Positions 17,968 through 28,270 of a stretch of 64,000 bases of DNA are shown one piece after another. The stretch lies in sequence record NC_006883.2, one strand, 5' to 3'. Within the stretch, counting starts at the first letter, position 1. Each line of letters begins with the position of its first letter. A program made the translations under genes and the position numbers. The notes under the pieces were generated by a model. That model ran no database searches and was not told the origin of the DNA. It saw nothing but the letters and a program-made list of their open reading frames with translations.

Positions 17968-18960
17968 ATGGCAATAGCACCAGTAAATAAGTTTATTAAT
18001 ATTGCCGTTCCTGTTGCACCAGGCGTACAGAAACTTTATGAGGTTCCTACAGGAACTTCTGCTCTATTATTGTATGCACAAGTATCTAATGTTGCTGTTG
18101 GAACAACTTATCCTACAACTACATTTTGGCAGAGAAGAACTCAGAGAAGTACTGGTAGTGAAAGAGATATACGAGTAATAAAATCAGCAGAGATACCACC
18201 ACAAGACGCATTAATAATGGTGGATGGTAGAATAGTATTAGAAAAAACTCCGATTGTAGTTGATAGTTTATACATTCGTGGAACTCAGCAAGGCGTTGGT
18301 ATTATTACTGATGTTCAATATGATGAACCAAGTGGAATTGCTACAGTTGTTACGAAGATAAAGCATGGATTTAATGCTGGTGATCAGATTAGTATGGGTG
18401 GAATGTATTTCACTTGCCCAAGTTATTCTGGTATAACAACTAATATTTTCCCAGATCCTCAGAGATCTTATACTGTAGATACTGTTGATGGTAATGTTGG
18501 AACATCTAAGACATTTTCAATTGATATTGGTGGTGCTAGTGGAAACGAACACGTTTATAGTACAGCAATTCATAGATTTGTTAGAGCAGTTCCTCAGTGT
18601 ATAGAGGTAGTTTCTAGTTCAGGTGTGGCAGTTGGAACAAAGTTTAGTGTAAGTACTGCAACTTATACTGGATCAACTGGAGAAATAACTTTAAATATTG
18701 GAAATAATGGTTTAGCAAATGGAGATACAATTAAGATAGCAGATAATTCTATAATAATGACTTGTACTATGGATAATCATTATAGTGAACATTCTTATCC
18801 TAGAGCAACAGATCCAGCATCTAATACTGCATTAACTCTTGCTGTTGCTGTTGCAAACGAATCAATTCGAGTAAATGTTGGTAAGTCTTATTCTGGTGGA
18901 TACGTTGCTCCATTAGAAATGGAACTAATAGCAAGTATCCTAGAGAATAGTAATGTCTAA
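17968..18960 (+). CDS. Virion structural protein
   Basis: Translationally coupled in the late operon; beta-rich; ITMTCTMD...YPRATDPA repeat-type domain. Confidence 0.6.
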
Positions 18961-20746
18961 GAGATACTTAAGTGGGCGGGTCAAACGATTACCCCAAGAT
19001 CAATTAAAAGATGATAGGTATAAGTATCTTGGTCTAGAACAGGCAGAACCAAACCTTGCCGATCCAATTACTAGTCCAGCAGTTCCTTCTGGTCAACAGT
19101 ATCAGTTGGTTGCTATTCCTGGTTTTGAAGGTAAGAGATATTGGGTTCCTGTTGGTGGTGGATTAATTCCAGGTGCGATTAGTGTATATGATGAAGGAAC
19201 TCTTGTTAGTGCTGCGAGTAGTGTAACTCAACTTAATTTTGTTGGTGCAGCAGTAACAGCACAAGTAGATGTTCAAAATCCTTCGGGACATCCAGGCATC
19301 GCTGCAACAATTACAGTTGTACCTGTTACTATTGGTTCTAATCCTCCAGTTAGTCCTATTCATGGAGAATTATGGTGGGAAGATGATATTGGAGACTTAT
19401 GTATTTACTATGATGATGGTGATACTAGTCAGTGGGTTACTGTAGTTGCTAGTGGAAACGGTGGTGGTCCTACTGGTCCTGCTGGTCCTCCAGGTCCAAC
19501 TGGAATAACTGGTCCTTCTGGTCCTCCAGGTCCTTCTGGTCCAGGTGGCGGTCCTGGTCCTGCTGGCCCTCAAGGTGATGTTGGTCCGAGTGGTGGTCCT
19601 GGTCCTACTGGACCTGCTGGTCCTCCTGGTCCTGCTGGTGGTCCTCCAGGTCCGCAAGGTCCGCAAGGTGATGCTGGTCCAACAGGTCCAACTGGTCCTC
19701 CTGGTACTGGATCTCCTGGTCCTGCAGGTCCTCCTGGTCCAAGTGGAGGTCCTGGTCCAACTGGTCCTGCTGGTCCTACGGGTCCAGACGGTCCTACAGG
19801 TCCAACTGGTCCTGCTGGTGGTCCTCCAGGTCCTCCTGGTCCAAGTGGTCCTCCAGGTCCGAGTGGTGGAGATGGTCCTGCTGGTCCAAGTGGTTCACCT
19901 GGTCCTCCAGGTCCTAGTGGTGGTCCTCCAGGTCCTAGTGGTGGTCCTGGTCCTGCTGGTCCTCCAGGTCCAGATGGTCCAAGTGGTCCTCCTGGTCCTG
20001 CTGGATCTGCTGGTGCGATACCTGCTGGTGTTGTTGTTATGTGGTCTGGTGCTCAGAATGCTATTCCTAGTGGATGGGTACTTTGCGATGGTAACAATAG
20101 CAGTCCAGATTTAAGAGATAAATTTGTTATTGGTGCTGGTAGTAACTACGCTGTAGATAATACAGGTGGTAGTGCTGATGCTGTAGTTGTAGATCACTCT
20201 CACTCTGCAAGTACTTCTGTTAGTGGTGCTGGTGCTCATACACACTCCTTCTCTGCTTCTGATTCTCACACTCACTCATTCTCAGGTTCGGGTTCAGATA
20301 CATTCTCTGGTTCTGGTTCTCATACACACTCCTTCTCTGGTTCTGGTTCTCACGGACACTCTTTGAGTTTAAGTGACTCTGCTCACCAACACACATCTGC
20401 TATTCCAGCACAGAATCAAGTCGCTGGTAATTCAGGTTCTCAAACAATTTGGGGTAGTGTTACTAACTCTCCAACTTGGGGTGCAACTGCTAATGTTAGT
20501 GGTTCTGCTGATAGTGCAAGTGTTAGTATTTCAGGTACTACAGGATCGGGTACTGCAAGTATATCTGGTTCAGTATCAATCTCAATCTCAGGTACAACTG
20601 GTAGTGGAACTGCAAGTATATCTGGTACAACTGGATCTGGTGGATCAGGTGTAAGTGGTAGCACTACAATTAGTTCGACAGGTGTTACAGGAACGAATAA
20701 GAATCTTCCTCCTTATTATGCACTATGTTACATTATGAAGTCTTAA
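18953..20746 (+). CDS. Collagen-like fibre with tail-collar domain and HxH needle
   Basis: Long G-P-x tract; collar [11 protein letters not shown]...GWVLCDG...[12 protein letters not shown]; six HxH motifs; C-terminal [13 protein letters not shown]. Confidence 0.85.
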
Positions 20747-20747
20747 A

Positions 20748-20754
20748 ATAAATA
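20748..20754 (+). promoter_or_regulatory. Late promoter
   Basis: ATAAATA, then GAGG SD, before ATG 20775. Confidence 0.6.
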
Positions 20755-20774
20755 AAGAGGTATATTAATACAGT

Positions 20775-22142
20775 ATGTCAAGAATTGATTTTCCAGCTAA
20801 TCCTAATGTAGGTCAAGATTATACCTACAATAATTCCGTTTGGAGATGGGATGGATACGTTTGGAGAAGAATTCCCGATCCAGGTGCTCCAGGTCCAACT
20901 GGTCCTGCTGGTGCTCCAGGTTTAACTGGACCTGCTGGTCCTGATGGTCCAAGTGGTCCTCCTGGTCCTCCTGGTCCTGCTGGTGGTCCTCCAGGTCCAA
21001 CTGGTCCTGCTGGTGATGATGGTGCTCCTGGTCCTCAAGGTCCTCCAGGTATCGGTGGTCCAACTGGTCCTCAAGGTCCTGCTGGTTCTCCAGGTCCAAC
21101 TGGTCCTGTAGGTCCTTCAAATCCAGGTCCAACTGGTCCCACAGGTCCCACAGGTCCAACTGGACCAGATGGTCCTACAGGTCCACCAGGTCCAGGTAAT
21201 ACAGGAACGATTGATAGTGTAAAGCAATATAGAACTCCTGGTGTAGAGAGAAGTTGTGAAAGTCCGATCTTTGTAGTTAATAACAATACAATTGGTATTG
21301 GATCGACAAGTAACGCTTTCGGAAATAGATTTGCTCAGAATGATGATCCTACTACTGCTAATGGTGGTAGTTGGACTGTATGTGATGGAGATTTATGGTA
21401 TGATATGGACTCTGGTGCTGGTGGTGGACCTGGTCCTGCTGGTCCTCCAGGTCCATCTGGTCCAGCAGGTCCTCCAGGTCCAGCAGGTCCTCCTGGATCT
21501 GGTGGTGGTGCAAATGTAGAAACATCTGATACTGCACCAAGTAATCCTAGTGATGGTGATCTCTGGTGGGATTCTATTAATGGACGATTAAATGTTTATT
21601 ACCAAGATGCTGATAGTTCACAGTGGGTTAGTTCTAATGGTGTAGGTGTTGGATCAACAGGTCCAGCAGGTCCTACAGGTCCAACTGGTCCAACTGGTCC
21701 GACTGGTTCTGCTGGTATTGGATCTACATCTATAATATCTCAGGGTGATAGTTTCGTTCAAGTACTTGATGGTAGTAATGCCTCTGGTATTGGATCAATT
21801 GCATTTGAAACACAAGGAACTAGAAGATGGCACGTTACTAATCAAGGACATATAATTCCTGCATTAAATTGTAGTTATGATCTTGGTAATGCAGAACAAA
21901 AAGTAAGACATCTATTCTTATGTGACAATAGTTTAAAGTTTGTAGGTGCGGATGATGTTGAACGGGCAGTTGGTATTACTAATGGTAATTTAACCTTTAT
22001 GGGTTCTCAATTACTAACAGTTAGTCTTACAACTCCTTCCGAAGGTGAAGTTTTAGAGTATAATGGAACAGTATGGGCAAACAAGGCTAAAACTCCAGTT
22101 GCTGGATTATTCCAAACAAAAAATTGGAATATGCCTTTCTAA
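20775..22142 (+). CDS. Collagen-like fibre protein
   Basis: N-terminal FPANP...WRWDG..W module, three G-P-x tracts, GDLWW...QWV module. Confidence 0.8.
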
Positions 22143-22145
22143 ATA
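22139..22145 (+). promoter_or_regulatory. Late promoter
   Basis: CTAAATA overlapping the upstream stop codon. Confidence 0.5.
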
Positions 22146-22166
22146 GTAAACAGGTAATTTAAAATT

Positions 22167-22589
22167 ATGGCAGCAACAGTATATAATGGAGTATTACAGG
22201 GAACTGGAGCAATTCACACTCAAGTCCTTTATACCAACAGTACTGGTAAAAATGTAAGGATAGTATGGAATTACTTTGGAGTAGGAAATACTCATCCTTC
22301 TGAACTTGGGATAGCTGTTGGTCCATCCTCTAATCCTAATCATAATGGTGGACAAGACCTTGATACAATGTATTTGTCATCACAAGCAAATTTCGCTGCA
22401 GGTAAATATCTTGCAGTGCAGAGGAATGATGATAATACATCAAACAATGCATATGGTTCTTATGGAGGTTCTTTTCCAACGGAACTTATGATACTTAATG
22501 GATCAAAAATTAGTATACTGATTCCTGCACAAATAGGTTCAAATACTAATGCTCTTACATATAATTTTGTAGCGATAACGGAAGATTAA
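22167..22589 (+). CDS. Small virion-associated beta protein (possible fibre tip/adhesin)
   Basis: Beta-rich, 140 aa, inside the fibre operon. Confidence 0.55.
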   Translation: MAATVYNGVLQGTGAIHTQVLYTNSTGKNVRIVWNYFGVGNTHPSELGIAVGPSSNPNHNGGQDLDTMYLSSQANFAAGKYLAVQRNDDNTSNNAYGSYGGSFPTELMILNGSKISILIPAQIGSNTNALTYNFVAITED

Positions 22590-22590
22590 T

Positions 22591-24237
22591 ATGGCAGTAA
22601 ATTTTCCAAATAGTCCTTCAACTAACGATACCCACACCGAGAACGGTTATACATGGAAGTGGGATGGAACTACTTGGATAATTCAATCTCTTGCTCCTCC
22701 AGGTCCTACAGGTCCAAGTGGTCCATCAGGTCCAAGTGGTCCAAGTGGTCCTAGCGGTCCTCCAGGTCCTCCAGGTCCAACAGGAGGTTCTGGGTCTTCT
22801 ACTTTTGTAGGTTTAACAGATACACCATCTACCTTTACTGCTGATAAGTTTGTAAAAGTAAATTCTAGTGGTAATGCTTTAGAATGGACTGATGCTCCTA
22901 CTAATGGATTACCTATAGTTAATGTTGCAGATTTTGGAGCACTTCCAGGTGCTAGTGGAGCAACAAATAGAACTAGTATTGAAGCAGCAATTAACTCATT
23001 AGCATCTACGGGAGGATTGGTTTATATTCCTACAGGAACTTATGATATAACAGGAACTATATTAATAGATCAAGGTGTTATGGGTGATGGTGGTGGTGTA
23101 AGTATCATCGGTCCAACTCAGAATTATAGAATTACTGCTGCTGATACTGAAGGAGTTTGTTTGAGATCTACTGATGCTGGTAGTGATATAATAAAAGTAA
23201 ATAATGTAAGAAATGTAACTTTTGCCAATCTAGCATTTGATCATAAAGAAGGCACATCTAGAACTGGTGGAAATGCTGTTCATTTTTATTCTAATGTGAA
23301 TACTCAACAGATTAGAATGGATAGGATTTATATCCGAAGACAATTTGGTGCTATTAAAGTAGATGGGCATTCAATCGCAACATTTAGAGATATAGAGATT
23401 AGAGATATTGTAAATGAAGGTGGTTCCTTTGGAATGTTATTCTCTGCTTCTGCTGGTGGATCAGAAAGACAAGATCAGATAAGATGTGAGAATGTTATTA
23501 TTGATGGTGTGATTAGTGGAAGTCCACATACATCGGCAGTAGGATTATGGGTTAAAGATTTTGTAAATTCAATATGGTTCCTTAATTGTGCTGTTCTTAG
23601 ATGTAATAAAGGATTCTTAATGGATTCAACTGTTCCTAGTGGATCAACAGGTAATCCTGGTTCATTCTTTAGAATAAATGATTGTGATTTTGATACAAAT
23701 AATTCATATGGTATTGAGATTGCTGGTGGTAGTTTCATTTGGATTAATAACCCATATATAAGTAGCAATTTCGTTAATGGTTTGAGGGTTAGTAGTACTT
23801 TTACGGGTGTATTAAGAGTAAATGCTGCTGACTGTAGAGGTAATAGACAGCACGGAATTTATATTGATTCACAAGATCATAAGAAGATCTTTATAAGAGA
23901 TTCGCAGTGCTCTAATAATTCTGCAACTAATACTAATCAATATGATGGTCTTGCTTTTTATGATTCTAATGGAACTAATCAATCAGATATTCATATTGAT
24001 GGTGGACAGTATGGTGGAGATATAATGGGATCAACTGATGGTGGTAATAGTACTAGCACACCTCAAAGATATGGTATAGCAGCAGTTAATAACTCAAAAT
24101 ATGATAGAGTTACTATTAATAATGTAGATTGTACTGGAAATAGAACTGGTACAGTTCAATTTAACCCTAATAATGGATCTGATAATTACATTCATAATGT
24201 TATCGGATTCCACGGAACACATTCAGGTGCTCACTAA
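22591..24237 (+). CDS. Tailspike-like protein with pectate-lyase-3-type beta-helix
   Basis: [10 protein letters not shown]......AIEAAI....[13 protein letters not shown] followed by parallel beta-helix repeats; N-terminal FPNSP module and short collagen. Confidence 0.8.
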
Positions 24238-25106
24238 TGGCAGTTAAGATACGAAAAGGTGGTCAATGGGTAACTATAGTAGGTAATGGTCCAGCAGGTC
24301 CTACAGGTCCAGCAGGTCCTCCTGGAAATGATGGAGCAGACGGTGCAGATGGAAATGATGGTGCAACAGGTCCAACTGGTCCTGCTGGTCCCACAGGTGG
24401 AACTGGTCCAACTGGTCCAGACGGTCCTCCAGGTCCAGGTGGTGGAACTGGTACTCCAGGTCCAGCAGGTCCTCCTGGAAATGATGGAGCAGATGGAAGT
24501 AATGGTCCTGCTGGTGCAACTGGTCCTGCAGGTCCAACTGGTCCTGCTGGTCCACCAGGTCCAACTGGTCCTGCTGGTCCCCAAGGTGTTGCTGGTCTAG
24601 ATATTGGAACTTCAGCTCCATCTGGTCCTTCAACTGCTGGTGATTTATGGTGGGAATCTGATACAGGAAATCTATACGTCTATTATAATGATAGTAATAG
24701 TGATCAGTGGGTATCAGTTTCACAAGGTCCTGCTGGTTCTCCAGGTCCTCCTGGTTCTGGTTTTCAAACAGTTACTAACCATACAACATCTTATACTTTA
24801 CAGGCAAGTGATATGGGAAATACTGTTAAAATTACATCTCCAGGTGGATCTGTTAATTTACAACTTACAATTCCTAATTTATCTTCTTCTTTAAGTTTTG
24901 GTGATGAAGTTAGAATTTTAAATGGTGCTAATGAATCTATAAATGTTAATGCTAGTGCTACTACTCTTTATTGGGCTCAATCAAAAGCAGGTAATCAGAA
25001 TGGTGGATACTCTACAGGTAATAGAGAAATATATGGATATGCTTTGATTACATTAACTTATACTGGTAGTAATTCATGGAACATTCATGGTGATGGGATC
25101 TTCTAA
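24237..25106 (+). CDS. Collagen-like fibre protein
   Basis: G-P-x tract with GNDGADG inserts, GDLWW...QWV module, C-terminal YTLQASDMG domain. Confidence 0.8.
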
Positions 25107-25109
25107 ATA
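25103..25109 (+). promoter_or_regulatory. Late promoter, possibly giving a leaderless mRNA
   Basis: CTAAATA ends 5 nt before ATG 25115. Confidence 0.45.
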
Positions 25110-25114
25110 GCAAA

Positions 25115-26794
25115 ATGGCAGCATTCGATTTTCCAAACAGTCCGTCCCTTAATGATACCCATACAGAAAATGGGGTAATTTGGAAGTGGAATGGATACGC
25201 TTGGGATAGAGTTCCAAGTAGTGGTCCGCAAGGTGCTCCTGGTCCTACAGGTCCAGCAGGTCCTACAGGTCCATCAGGTCCTACAGGTGGAGATGGTCCT
25301 CCAGGTCCAGGTGGTCCAGGTGGTGGCACAGGTCCAGCAGGTCCTCCAGGTCCTCCTGGAAATGATGGTGCTGATGGTTCTGATGGTGGAACTGGTACTC
25401 CAGGTCCAGCAGGTCCTCCAGGTCCTCCTGGAAATGATGGTGCTGATGGAAATGATGGTGGATCAGGTCCTACTGGTCCGACAGGTCCCACAGGACCAAC
25501 TGGTCCCACAGGTCCAACTGGTCCTGCTGGAGCAAGAAATTATACTATAACAAATAGTGGATCTGGTTCTTACTGTGTTGATAGTGTATGCAGTAATCCA
25601 ACAATAACTTTATTAAGAGGTTTAAGTTATACTTTTACTGTAAATGCAAGTGGACATCCATTCTATATTAAGACCTCTCAAACTACTGGAACGGCTAATC
25701 AATATAATACGGGAGTAACAAATAACGGTACTCAATCAGGAACTATAACTTGGAATGTTGCATCTGACGCACCAAGTACTCTTTATTATATTTGTCAATA
25801 TCATAGTGCTATGACAGGCACTATTTCTATATCAGATTTAGGTCCTGCTGGTCCTCCAGGTCCAACTGGTCCTACAGGACCTACAGGTCCAACTGGTCCA
25901 ACTGGTCCTTCAGGTGGAACTGGTCCAACTGGTCCTGCTGGTGCTGACGGAAGTGATGGTGCTGATGGTGGAACTGGTCCGACTGGTCCTGCTGGTCCTA
26001 CTGGTGGAGATGGTCCTCCAGGTCCAACTGGTCCAGGCGGAACTGGTCCAACTGGTCCTACTGGTGATGATGGTCCTCCAGGTCCTCCAGGTCCAGGCGG
26101 AACTGGTCCTGCTGGTCCTCCAGGACCTCCTGGTGCTGACGGTGATGATGGGGGAAGTGGTCCTCCAGGTCCTCCAGGTTCTGATGGTTCTGATGGAGGA
26201 AGTGGTCCTCCAGGACCTCCAGGTCCTACTGGTGGAGATGGTCCTCCTGGTCCAGGTGGAACTGGTCCGACTGGTCCAACTGGTCCAACAGGTCCTTCAG
26301 GTGGAAGTGGTCCTCCAGGTCCACCAGGAACTTCAGGTGCTACAGTAATTCCTTCAGGCACTGTTATGGTATTCATGCAAAGTTCTGCTCCTACTGGATG
26401 GTCTAGAACTTCATCTTATGATGGTAGGGCGATAAGAATTTCAAGTTCTGGTGGTGGTACTGGTGGTAGTAGATCTTGGGATAATACTTTTGATTATATA
26501 ACTAAGTGGCATAGTAATGTACTTACTGGTAGAGTTACTGATGGACATACATTAACATCATCTCAAGGTCCAGTTCACAACCACTCTTATGATGTTCCTC
26601 GTGGATCTTGGGGTGGACAGTATGGTTTCCAAGATACAGCAAACTCTGGTTCTTCTGGAACTCAAGCAGTTGCTGGTAATACACCAGGAGGTGGAAGTCA
26701 CAGTCACGATCTTAATAACATATCTCTTAATATTGGAACATATGTAGATAGACGACTTGTGTATGCTACTGCTATAATATGCAGTAAGAACTAG
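25115..26794 (+). CDS. Collagen-like fibre with cupredoxin-like domain and collar-type tip
   Basis: FPNSP module; collagen; [10 protein letters not shown]...GHPFY...[15 protein letters not shown]; [17 protein letters not shown] tip domain. Confidence 0.8.
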
Positions 26795-26800
26795 ATTTAT

Positions 26801-27124
26801 ATGAAACTTGAACAAGGAAAATTTTGTCCTCTGATTGGAAAAGATTGTATTGGATTACAATGTGCTTGGTTTACACAGGTAAGAGGGATGCATCCTCAGA
26901 CTGGTGAAGATATTGATGAGTGGGATTGTGCTATTCAATGGATGCCAGTTTTATTAATTGAAAATTCTAGAAAACAAAATGAAACTAGTGCAGCAGTCGA
27001 ATCATTCCGAAACGAAATGGTAATTAATAATGAGAATGCAAAGAAAATGTATCTTGAAACTATACAGGAGAAATTAAGCAAACCCAGACAAATACATAAC
27101 ATAAGTGAGGCTGTAGAAGAATGA
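26801..27124 (+). CDS. Cys-rich fibre-associated protein
   Basis: CPLIGKDC...CAWF...WDCAIQW then a coiled coil; follows the fibre gene. Confidence 0.6.
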   Translation: MKLEQGKFCPLIGKDCIGLQCAWFTQVRGMHPQTGEDIDEWDCAIQWMPVLLIENSRKQNETSAAVESFRNEMVINNENAKKMYLETIQEKLSKPRQIHNISEAVEE

Positions 27125-27642
27125 AATTATCAATTATTCCAGGAGATAAAATTATTGCTTTAAATAATCAATCTTTAGTGGGAATTAAAACAGATCTTTC
27201 TTGGATTCCAACAAATGTTTATGCAGTTCAGTGGAATGATAATTGGGAAGCAAATTGTGGGTTATCTTCAGAATGTACTGGAATATCCACAGGATTTATT
27301 CAGTATAATGATTCAACTCCACCATTAGGTATATCAACAACTGGAATATATTGGCAAGGAGTAACTGCTTTTGAAAATGAGAAATCTACTTTAGAAAATG
27401 AAAGAGAAGCAGCAAGAGATCATTTGGCAGAAGTAAAAAGATTTAGAATGAATTTACTTTATGATAGTGATTGGACTCAAGGTAATGATTCCCCATTTAA
27501 TGATAGTAAGAAATCTGAGTGGGCAACGTATCGTCAGCAATTAAGAGATCTTCCAGCAACGATAGCAGCAGATTCCAACATAACTGCTAAAGCAATGATG
27601 GATGATATTAATCATTCTGCTTGGCCGACAAGACCATCATAA
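27121..27642 (+). CDS. Tail fibre assembly chaperone-like protein
   Basis: C-terminal LLYDSDWTQ..D......EWATYRQQLRDLP...WP motif. Confidence 0.75.
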   Translation: MKLSIIPGDKIIALNNQSLVGIKTDLSWIPTNVYAVQWNDNWEANCGLSSECTGISTGFIQYNDSTPPLGISTTGIYWQGVTAFENEKSTLENEREAARDHLAEVKRFRMNLLYDSDWTQGNDSPFNDSKKSEWATYRQQLRDLPATIAADSNITAKAMMDDINHSAWPTRPS

Positions 27643-27676: not shown

Positions 27677-28270
27677 ATGAATGATCTGATACAAGTAATT
27701 AAAATTCTTAATGGTACTGATCTTAAAAAGGTAAATCAATATGTTGATACTTTAGATTTTGAAGATAATACTGTGTTTGGCAAACCTGGTGAGGAATGTC
27801 AAACTAATACTGATATTAGATCTAGTACTGGGGTATCTTTAGATGATGCACACGAAATAACTAATGTTATTCATACCAGTATGAATAATGGATTGGATGA
27901 ATATAAGAGAAGAGTGCAAAAGATTCATCCGAATTTTAGTTATTATCCTGTACCTGGTGCTGTGGGAACTAGATCTTGGAGAGAAGGAATACAGATATTA
28001 GATTATAAAAAAGGACAAGAATATAAATTTCATCATGATGCAGCAACAGAACCTAGATTAGGTGAGTATCATAGAAAGATTTCTGTTATATTATATTTAA
28101 AGGAAGCAACTAAAGGTGGTGGGACTGCATTTTCCCATCTATCAGTAAAACCAAAACCAGGTTATGCTCTTATATTTCCATCTAATTGGTGTTATCCTCA
28201 TGCAGGTGAACCTGTAAGTGCAGGTAAAAAACGAGTTGCAGTTACTTGGTATTACGTTGAGAATATATAG
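27677..28270 (+). CDS. 2OG-Fe(II) oxygenase, prolyl-4-hydroxylase-like
   Basis: YKKGQEYKFHHD (HxD), ISVILYL, GGGTAF, LIFPS...YPHAG (distal His), KKRVAVTW. Confidence 0.88.
   Translation: MNDLIQVIKILNGTDLKKVNQYVDTLDFEDNTVFGKPGEECQTNTDIRSSTGVSLDDAHEITNVIHTSMNNGLDEYKRRVQKIHPNFSYYPVPGAVGTRSWREGIQILDYKKGQEYKFHHDAATEPRLGEYHRKISVILYLKEATKGGGTAFSHLSVKPKPGYALIFPSNWCYPHAGEPVSAGKKRVAVTWYYVENI

What the first reader, a model, noticed from the sequence alone, without database searches (positions are those of the whole stretch)
18953..26794. Plug-and-socket modules suggest the collagen fibres assemble into a branched tree
Seen: three genes (20775, 22591, 25115) start with the same ~30-aa 'FPxxP...WxWxG..W' module. 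Three genes (18953, 20775, 24237) carry an internal 'P...G(D/E)LWW...L.(V/I)YY.D....QWV' module next to collagen. Gene 20775 has both, and the distal ends differ (beta-helix, cupredoxin, HxH needle). Established: branched receptor-binding complexes are built by docking N-terminal anchors onto other fibres (e.g. CBA120/G7C tailspikes). Inference: a 3-plug/3-socket code joins these fibres into one multi-receptor appendage.
Basis: partly seen in the sequence, partly recalled or inferred. Interest (0 to 1): 0.7.

Follow-up and report, generated by a model that had tools for sequence, protein, structure and literature searches.

The report
Cyanophage fibre-joining modules, N-terminal and internal
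Two short conserved protein modules in the tail-fibre genes of the ocean virus P-SSM2 are real and widespread. They probably mark where one fibre hangs on another, as in known branched phage receptor-binding complexes, but binding between them has not been shown.

Summary
The window is Prochlorococcus phage P-SSM2, bases 1-64000. A ~35-residue module opens genes 024, 026 and 028, and a ~45-residue internal module lies in 023, 024 and 027. A fourth copy of each lies outside the window, in 296 and 295. Along the genome they alternate strictly: I, N, I, N, I, N, and I, N.

In about 150 viral contigs and several isolates, the N module starts at residue 10 or earlier in 211 of 212 genes. The I module is never N-terminal and occurs 1-5 times per gene. 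The two co-occur in 48 of 49 loci of 15 kb or more. N genes lie downstream of I genes far more often than other genes do (odds ratio 3.8).

In the T7-like phage S-TIP28, the I module follows the tail-anchor domain of the fibre, and the next gene is an N-headed tailspike. This is the layout of known anchor-branch systems. A model of gene 027 matches the assembly region of CBA120 TSP4.

There are limits. Syn5 has N without I, and a Bacillus phage has I without N nearby. Neither module matches Pfam or PDB. No binding was tested. I rate direct N-to-I docking at about 0.5. A single tree is less likely than three small assemblies.

The parts
18953..20746 (+). PSSM2_023, a fibre gene of 597 aa. It has an unassigned N-terminal 120 aa, the internal (I) module, a long collagen-like run (aa 172-356), and a His-rich tail-fibre tip.
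   Evidence: The C-terminal 241 aa match solved tail-fibre tips 9nxk, 6ov6 and 9qgo (E 1e-6 to 3e-5), and T4 gp37 weakly (E 0.5).
19325..19465 (+). I module of 023 (aa about 125-171)
   Evidence: HMM E 9.5e-22; alignment.
20775..22142 (+). PSSM2_024, 455 aa, the only gene in the window with both modules. Layout: N, collagen, a 70-aa spacer, collagen, I, collagen, then a 140-aa C-terminal domain.
20775..20885 (+). N module of 024, the most divergent of the four N modules
   Evidence: HMM E 7e-19; 32-45% identity to the other N modules.
21516..21653 (+). I module of 024
   Evidence: HMM E 1.2e-21
22167..22589 (+). PSSM2_025, 140 aa, a small gene between 024 and 026. It has no module and no family match.
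22591..24237 (+). PSSM2_026, 548 aa. Layout: N module, a short collagen run, then a right-handed beta-helix (tailspike-like).
   Evidence: AF2 mean pLDDT 81.7. Foldseek matches mannuronan epimerases, CBA120 TSP3, and the Sf6 and Pam1 tailspikes. Close relatives carry Pfam PF12708.
22591..22695 (+). N module of 026
   Evidence: HMM E 1.5e-19. AF2 predicts three short strands with pLDDT 80-88.
24237..25106 (+). PSSM2_027, 289 aa. Layout: a 17-aa N-terminus, collagen (aa 18-122), the I module, a flexible linker, then a C-terminal beta-sandwich.
   Evidence: AF2. Foldseek top hits are CBA120 TSP4 residues 1-335 (E 6e-7), then T4 gp9, CpaA, StcE and T4 gp10, which together are the XD1 fold set (PMC8825819).
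24597..24737 (+). I module of 027
   Evidence: HMM E 3e-21. AF2 predicts four short strands with pLDDT 70-80, separated from the next domain by a disordered linker.
25115..26794 (+). PSSM2_028, 559 aa. Layout: N module, collagen, a cupredoxin-like stretch (aa 142-245), long collagen, then a 150-aa C-terminal domain.
25115..25225 (+). N module of 028
   Evidence: HMM E 6.9e-21
27121..27642 (+). PSSM2_030, a tail-fibre assembly chaperone. It is a neighbour, not part of the module pair.
   Evidence: Pfam PF16778, E 8e-12

Best explanation
The N module and the I module are the two ends of a modular system that joins one fibre or spike to another. The N module is a small, independently folding domain at the very start of a fibre or tailspike chain. 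It is the part by which that trimer is hung on another virion protein. The I module is a small beta-sheet unit inside the carrier protein, which can be another fibre or, in some phages, a baseplate wedge protein. It marks the node at or beside which an N-headed trimer is attached.

Gene order follows assembly order: the carrier gene comes first and the attached gene comes next. In P-SSM2 this predicts three assemblies:
- 023 carries 024, which carries the beta-helix spike 026.
- 027 carries 028.
- The gp10-like 295 carries 296.

Each assembly would display two or three different receptor-binding ends. This is an anchor-branch arrangement of the G7C / CBA120 / KP32 type, built from different modules.

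What is shown: the modules, their positions, their linkage and gene order, and the predicted folds.

What is inferred: that N binds at I, and whether each joint is a side branch or an end-to-end extension.
For: (1) Position. The N module starts at residue 10 or earlier in 211 of 212 unique complete genes. The I module never does. Among the 177 proteins returned by the database searches, 135 of 138 N modules start at residue 1-2.

(2) Linkage. All 23 N-seeded loci of 15 kb or more contain an I module, and 25 of 26 I-seeded loci contain an N module. In 20-kb loci, the numbers of N genes and I genes track each other: (1,1) sixteen times, (2,2), (4,4), (5,6); Spearman 0.81.

(3) Gene order.
- P-SSM2 alternates I, N, I, N, I, N and I, N.
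- The nearest upstream gene of 150 aa or more carries an I module for 80 of 191 N genes, against 104 of 651 other genes (odds ratio 3.8, p 4e-13).
- The same I-then-N order is seen in S-RSM4, S-B68, S-CREM2, MA01, actinophage DSL-LC01 and three MAG/SAG contigs.
- In MA01 a gene with three I modules is followed by three N genes.

(4) S-TIP28, a complete T7-like genome. The fibre runs Pfam T7-tail anchor (aa 6-103), I module (aa 133-177), then beta-helix. The next gene is an N module plus a pectate-lyase-like helix. Of 73 marine podovirus fibres sharing that anchor, only this one extends into an I module. This is the layout Latka et al. describe for anchor-branch systems (PMC6872550).

(5) Baseplate copies. 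MA01 and S-CREM2 carry three tandem I modules in a baseplate wedge protein, which could serve as a root. PSSM2_295 has a gp10-like N-terminus (PMC1079782).

(6) Fold. The I module plus the C-terminal domain of 027 match the CBA120 TSP4 assembly region.

(7) Co-divergence. Within P-SSM2, identity among the four I modules and identity among their four downstream N modules rank the same way (71/63/57/46-49 against 71/65/52/32-45). The stretches between each I and the next N are not homologous.
Against: - No binding was predicted or measured. The tools give single-chain models only.
- Syn5, a complete genome, has one N module (gp52) and no I module.
- Bacillus phage PBC2 has an I module and no N module within 12 kb. 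S-CAM7 has N genes with only a marginal I module nearby.
- Counts are unequal: MA01 has 12 I and 9 N, and S-B68 has 7 I and 2 N.
- 111 of 191 N genes do not follow an I gene.
- Tandem I copies, and I copies at the very C-terminal end of giant fibres, look like shaft or knot repeats.
- The known docking domains, T4 gp10 XD2/XD3, were not found. The fold detected in 027 is XD1, which Chao et al. regard as a spacer (PMC8825819).
- In the S-CREM2 record, the N and I genes gp112-115 are not flagged as virion proteins.
- The co-divergence rests on only four pairs. The cross-locus concordance is confounded by conserved synteny.
Confidence: 0.5

Rival explanations
1. The N module is a docking module, but the I module is not its socket. 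N-headed trimers attach to some other site, such as the baseplate, a beta-sandwich or jellyroll domain near the I module, or a horn or tail protein. The I module is a trimeric shaft or knot unit of fibres. The two travel together only because both belong to the same mosaic fibre-gene toolkit and the same gene clusters.
For: - Syn5 has N and no I.
- PBC2 has I and no N nearby.
- I occurs in tandem arrays of up to five copies and at the extreme C-terminal ends of proteins.
- I-to-N ratios are unequal.
- The model of 027 aligns over 165 columns with the TSP4 region that runs from the anchor domain through XD1. In TSP4 these are fibre-like and spacer elements (PMC8825819).
Against: - In S-TIP28 the I module is the only unassigned conserved element between the tail anchor and the spike body, and it appears together with an N-headed second spike.
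- N genes are enriched directly downstream of I genes compared with other genes in the same clusters.
- I and its downstream N co-diverge within P-SSM2 across non-homologous intervening sequence.
Confidence: 0.3
2. Both modules are folding nuclei that set the register for trimerisation of collagen-like and beta-structured fibre segments. They would work in the way the fibritin C-terminal domain or bacterial collagen V domains do, and no contact between proteins would be involved.
For: - In the window, every module abuts a collagen run.
- 149 of 214 N modules are followed by collagen within 25 residues, and 141 of 256 I modules have collagen on one side or the other.
- Collagen-then-I architectures with nothing after the I module exist in 8 unique genes.
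- Both modules are small beta units that AF2 folds on their own.
Against: - 33 of 214 N genes and 20 of 170 I genes have no collagen at all. PSSM2_295, the S-TIP28 fibre and the S-TIP28 spike are examples.
- This idea explains neither the strict N-terminal position of N, nor the I-then-N gene order, nor why the two co-occur in a podovirus with no collagen next to either.
- Profile searches of the PDB returned no fibritin or other registration domain.
Confidence: 0.15

Closest known systems
CBA120 TSP1-4 branched tailspike complex and T4 gp10 (XD domains)
   Same: Several different receptor-binding trimers are encoded side by side. A carrier protein has assembly domains near its N-terminal part. 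The model of PSSM2_027 (I module plus C-terminal sandwich) matches TSP4 residues 1-335 best (E 6e-7). It also matches T4 gp9 and gp10, CpaA and StcE, which is the XD1 fold set (PMC8825819). PSSM2_295 was described as a gp10-like fusion (PMC1079782).
   Different: No XD2/XD3 jellyroll domain, the experimentally shown docking site, was detected. Neither the I nor the N module matches Pfam or PDB by sequence. The fibres here contain collagen-like stalks.
G7C gp66/gp63.1 and the Klebsiella KP32/KP34-type anchor-branch RBP pairs (Latka et al. 2019, PMC6872550)
   Same: The first RBP has an N-terminal tail anchor followed by a branching element. The gene next door encodes a second RBP with a short conserved N-terminal peptide (7-29 aa there, about 30-35 aa here) and a different enzymatic or binding body. 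S-TIP28 reproduces this layout exactly.
   Different: The branching element there is a T4gp10-like fragment. Here it would be the unrelated I module. The pair here is shared across myoviruses, a podovirus, an actinophage and uncultured lineages, rather than being specific to one phage group.
T4 long tail fibre gp34-gp35-gp36-gp37 (end-to-end joints, gene order equals assembly order)
   Same: Consecutive genes encode consecutive segments of one appendage. The His-rich tip of 023 is related to tail-fibre tips, including a weak match to gp37.
   Different: There is no hinge protein equivalent. The I module is usually internal, so the carrier continues beyond the joint. I recall the T4 comparison from general knowledge and did not test it beyond.
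Trimerisation or registration domains flanking collagen-like helices (T4 fibritin C-terminal domain, bacterial and prophage collagen-like proteins)
   Same: These are small beta units directly beside Gly-X-Y runs in trimeric fibres.
   Different: No sequence match came back from the PDB. Many copies are not next to collagen.

Membership tests
Anchor-branch / branched multi-RBP complexes (G7C, CBA120, KP32-type) | The carrier RBP has an N-terminal domain that anchors it to the virion | tested here: inconclusive
   Met in S-TIP28 (Pfam Phage_T7_tail, aa 6-103, E 3.5e-18). PSSM2_295 is reported as gp10-like (PMC1079782), although Pfam found nothing in it. The N-terminal parts of 023 and 027 in the window have no assignable anchor.
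Anchor-branch / branched multi-RBP complexes (G7C, CBA120, KP32-type) | The carrier has a T4 gp10-like XD2/XD3 jellyroll docking domain | tested here: not met
   No Pfam, PHROG or PDB sequence match to gp10 domains. Foldseek finds the XD1-type sandwich in 027, not XD2/XD3.
Anchor-branch / branched multi-RBP complexes (G7C, CBA120, KP32-type) | Partner RBPs carry a short N-terminal peptide or domain conserved across otherwise different RBPs | tested here: met
   The N module is at residue 1-10 in 211 of 212 genes. It sits in front of collagen fibres, beta-helix spikes and small proteins.
Anchor-branch / branched multi-RBP complexes (G7C, CBA120, KP32-type) | The partner gene lies next to the carrier gene | tested here: met
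   4 of 4 in P-SSM2. 80 of 191 against 104 of 651 in the wider sample. Also seen in isolates.
Anchor-branch / branched multi-RBP complexes (G7C, CBA120, KP32-type) | A physical complex of carrier and partner trimers | not testable with these tools
   Only single-chain predictions are available, and model coordinates and contact maps are not returned.
Collagen registration / trimerisation domains (fibritin-type) | Always flanks the triple helix, and is related by sequence or fold to a known registration domain | tested here: not met
   115 of 256 I modules and 65 of 214 N modules have no collagen within 25 aa. PDB profile searches returned no such domain.
WW domain (a lead from memory for the I module) | Match to Pfam WW (PF00397) or to solved WW domains | tested here: not met
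   WW is not among the Pfam matches of 43 I modules at E up to 1. There is no WW chain in the PDB profile search. No fold search of the isolated module was possible.
Phage tailspike with right-handed beta-helix (for PSSM2_026) | A parallel beta-helix body similar to polysaccharide lyases, epimerases and tailspikes | tested here: met
   AF2 pLDDT is about 90 over aa 110-540. Foldseek E 5e-9 to 2e-4 against AlgE4/AlgE6, CBA120 TSP3, and the Sf6 and Pam1 tailspikes. Relatives carry Pfam PF12708. Catalytic residues were not examined.

The most novel reading that the evidence does not exclude
The N and I modules form a portable docking code with specific pairings, shared by marine cyanomyoviruses, at least one cyanopodovirus, freshwater actinophages and uncultured lineages. 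Cognate N-I pairs co-diverge. Tandem I arrays on baseplate wedge proteins and on fibres act as multi-socket roots. Whole receptor-binding fibres can then be exchanged between phages as units that still fit, building multi-level appendages with many receptor specificities.
Probability: 0.25. Interest if true: 0.8.

Novelty: new variant of a known kind. Interest (0 to 1): 0.62.

Why it matters
How T4-like cyanophages build their fibres and choose hosts has been open since the first genomes were sequenced. Sullivan et al. 2005 could not find gp10, gp11, gp12, gp34-37 or wac in P-SSM2. They could only list candidate fibre genes.

A recurrent pair of modules that says which fibre gene hangs on which would do three things:
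- It would turn a list of about a dozen unassigned fibre genes per genome into a wiring diagram that can be checked by structure.
- It would explain the mosaic exchange of fibre genes among abundant ocean viruses.
- It would add a second, unrelated solution to the branching problem, which so far is known to be solved only by T4 gp10-like domains.

Neither module is in Pfam or the PDB, so both are candidates for new family definitions.

Tried and rejected
- **Are N and I two versions of one motif?** hhalign gives 2% probability with the three-sequence alignments and 8% with the 43- and 53-sequence alignments. Only the first nine columns align. Homology is not supported.
- **Likeness of N to the T4 fibritin C-terminal domain, and of I to WW domains.** No such hit appeared in PDB profile searches or in Pfam.
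- **AF2 of the isolated I module with the 43-sequence alignment.** I did not send it by another route. The module was modelled only within 027.
- **The search for related loci with the 53-sequence N alignment.** The three-sequence alignment was used instead.
- **Cross-locus concordance of I and N partners.** The result was 331 of 370, against 42% when shuffled. It looks strong but is explained by conserved gene order among related phages, so I give it no weight.
- **tblastn counts per record with the P-SSM2 N module.** These understated the N module. S-B68 showed 0 copies, but the HMM finds 2. I therefore did not use the first impression that I is common and N is rare.
- **The borderline PDB hit of N to 8y6v_I gp184 (E 0.07).** Not followed up.
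- **Virion proteomics for P-SSM2 genes 023-028.** None was found in the papers searched.


Full report
**Identity of the window.** The region is 100% identical to Prochlorococcus phage P-SSM2 at the same coordinates. The window is therefore bases 1-64000 of that 252-kb T4-like cyanomyovirus. The finding covers PSSM2_023 to PSSM2_028. All of these are on the + strand in a long run of fibre and baseplate-hub genes. They are followed by a tail-fibre assembly chaperone (Pfam PF16778) and a 2OG-Fe(II) oxygenase.

**Observation.**
- Genes 024, 026 and 028 begin with a shared module of about 35 residues, with ten invariant columns among the three.
- Genes 023, 024 and 027 hold a shared internal module of about 45 residues, with fifteen invariant columns.
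- Regex and HMM scans of all six frames find no further copy in the window.

I fetched the rest of the genome. With iterated profiles there are exactly four of each. The extra I module is in PSSM2_295 and the extra N module is in PSSM2_296, the gene directly after it. Along the genome the order is I, N, I, N, I, N and I, N. PSSM2_295 has no collagen, so the I module is not tied to collagen.

**How widespread, and where in proteins.** Pattern scans of IMG/VR returned 152 loci. I used a simple gene caller that reproduces the window's annotation and iterated profile HMMs. This gave 254 N and 305 I domain hits.
- The N module starts at residue 10 or earlier in 211 of 212 unique complete genes.
- The I module never starts there. 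It occurs one to five times per gene, sometimes in tandem.
- Architectures are mosaic. N followed by collagen and a variable body is commonest. I is found between a body and collagen, between collagen runs, in tandem, or at the very C-terminal end. A few small proteins are N-collagen-I or N-I.
- Among the 177 proteins returned by two database searches, 135 of 138 N modules start at residue 1 or 2.
- Neither module has a Pfam family or a relative in the PDB by profile search.
- PHROGs lumps the I module into the C-terminal end of phrog_3304 and others.
- The two modules are not detectably homologous to each other.

**Linkage of the two modules.**
- In loci of 15 kb or more, all 23 N-seeded loci contain I, and 25 of 26 I-seeded loci contain N. 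In 20-kb loci the numbers of N genes and I genes track each other (Spearman 0.81). Many of these loci are related, so this overstates independence.
- The nearest upstream gene of at least 150 aa carries I for 80 of 191 N genes, against 104 of 651 other genes in the same neighbourhoods (odds ratio 3.8, p 4e-13). At the level of N-gene clusters the figure is 64 of 154.
- The I-then-N order recurs in S-RSM4, S-B68 (twice), actinophage DSL-LC01, S-CREM2, MA01 and three MAG/SAG contigs.
- In MA01, a gene with three tandem I modules is followed by three N genes, and the third of these also carries an I module and is followed by two more N genes. In both MA01 and S-CREM2, a baseplate wedge protein carries three tandem I modules.

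**The clearest case.** S-TIP28 is a complete 45.7-kb T7-like genome.
- Its tail fibre runs Pfam Phage_T7_tail anchor (aa 6-103), I module (aa 133-177), endosialidase-type N extension, then beta-helix.
- The next gene is an N module plus a pectate-lyase-like helix.
- Of 73 marine podovirus fibres sharing the anchor, only this one continues into an I module.

**Structure.** AF2 was run on residues 120-289 of 027 with 42 relatives.
- The I module is predicted as four short strands (pLDDT 70-80).
- A disordered linker follows.
- Then comes a confident beta-sandwich.

Foldseek against the PDB puts CBA120 TSP4 residues 1-335 first (E 6e-7, 165 columns). It is followed by Klebsiella phage KP1 baseplate chains, T4 gp9, CpaA, StcE and T4 gp10. 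This is the XD1 fold set listed by Chao et al. They describe TSP4-N as the anchor and assembly region of a branched complex, but regard XD1 as a spacer and XD2/XD3 as the docking sites (PMC8825819). BFVD matches are mostly unnamed phage proteins and include a Gp9/Gp10-named one.

AF2 of 026 gives:
- the N module as a three-stranded unit (pLDDT 80-88);
- a disordered collagen run, which is expected for a single chain;
- a beta-helix.

The helix matches alginate epimerases and phage tailspikes.

**Co-divergence.** Within P-SSM2, identities among the I modules are 71% (024-295), 63% (024-027), 57% (027-295) and 46-49% (023 against the rest). Identities among the N modules of the genes that follow them are 71% (026-296), 65% (026-028), 52% (028-296) and 32-45% (024 against the rest). 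These rank the same way, although the sequences between each I and the next N are unrelated. This is suggestive but rests on four pairs.

**Against a strict plug-and-socket code.**
- Syn5, a complete genome, has one N module (gp52, homologous to a small S-TIP28 protein) and no I module. S-CBP1 has neither.
- Bacillus phage PBC2 has I and no N within 12 kb.
- S-CAM7 has N genes and only a marginal I module.
- Counts differ: 12 to 9 in MA01 and 7 to 2 in S-B68.
- Tandem and C-terminal I copies look like shaft or knot repeats.
- In the S-CREM2 record the module-bearing genes gp112-115 lack the virion-protein flag that other structural genes carry.

**Verdict.**
- The reading as a fibre-joining system is the best-supported explanation (0.5), but it remains an inference from position, linkage, gene order and fold likeness.
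- The main rival keeps N as a docking module and makes I a structural unit (0.3). A pure folding-nucleus role for both is less likely (0.15).
- Gene order argues for three small assemblies in P-SSM2 rather than one tree.
- This is a new variant of a known kind: anchor-branch logic built from modules unrelated by sequence to T4 gp10 domains.

The likenesses were tested only through PDB and Pfam searches with the window's own modules, and they came back negative.
- They were not used as queries.
- One search printed far more raw alignment rows than needed.

Noticed in passing
window 25538-25849 (PSSM2_028 aa 142-245): A cupredoxin-like stretch sits between two collagen runs, in the middle of a fibre protein. 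Support is weak: a copper nitrite reductase chain at E 0.15, and PHROG families 677 and 9158. Copper ligands were not verified.
   Followed up: partly
window 27677-28270 (PSSM2_031): A 2OG-Fe(II) oxygenase gene lies directly after the collagen-fibre cluster and the fibre chaperone. The P-SSM2 record annotates more than fifteen such oxygenases genome-wide. A role in hydroxylating the collagen-like fibres is possible but untested.
   Followed up: no
window 18001-26000: GC content is about 0.44 in the collagen-bearing genes, against 0.33-0.37 around them. The same repeats generate long spurious ORFs in other frames and on the minus strand (for example 25801-26376).
   Followed up: no
window 21384-21416 and 24264-24290: Gene 024 has a cut-down copy of the start of the I module just before its second collagen run. 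The 17-residue N-terminus of 027 weakly resembles the last strand of the I module (tblastn E 0.3).
   Followed up: partly
L174 17639-17983 (Syn5 gp52) and L158 38268-38615 (STIP28_55): These are homologous 115-aa proteins that begin with the N module, just upstream of structural genes gp53/gp54. In Syn5 this is the only N module, and the genome has no I module.
   Followed up: partly
L164 18895-24723 (MA01) and L176 20839-26108 (S-CREM2 gp122): Large baseplate wedge proteins carry three tandem I modules at about residues 1140-1320. P-SSM2's own gp7-like giant protein has none.
   Followed up: partly
protein P0176 (382 aa, metagenomic): The N module is fused directly in front of a Pfam Phage_T7_tail anchor domain. 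One chain thus carries two attachment-type modules.
   Followed up: no
L163 18374-18478 (S-CAM7): The N module begins 48 nt upstream of the annotated start (18422) of the 'collagen triple helix repeat protein'. The annotated start is probably too late.
   Followed up: no
window 18953-18960 and 24234-24237: Start and stop codons overlap between 022 and 023, and between 026 and 027. This suggests translational coupling within the fibre cluster.
   Followed up: no
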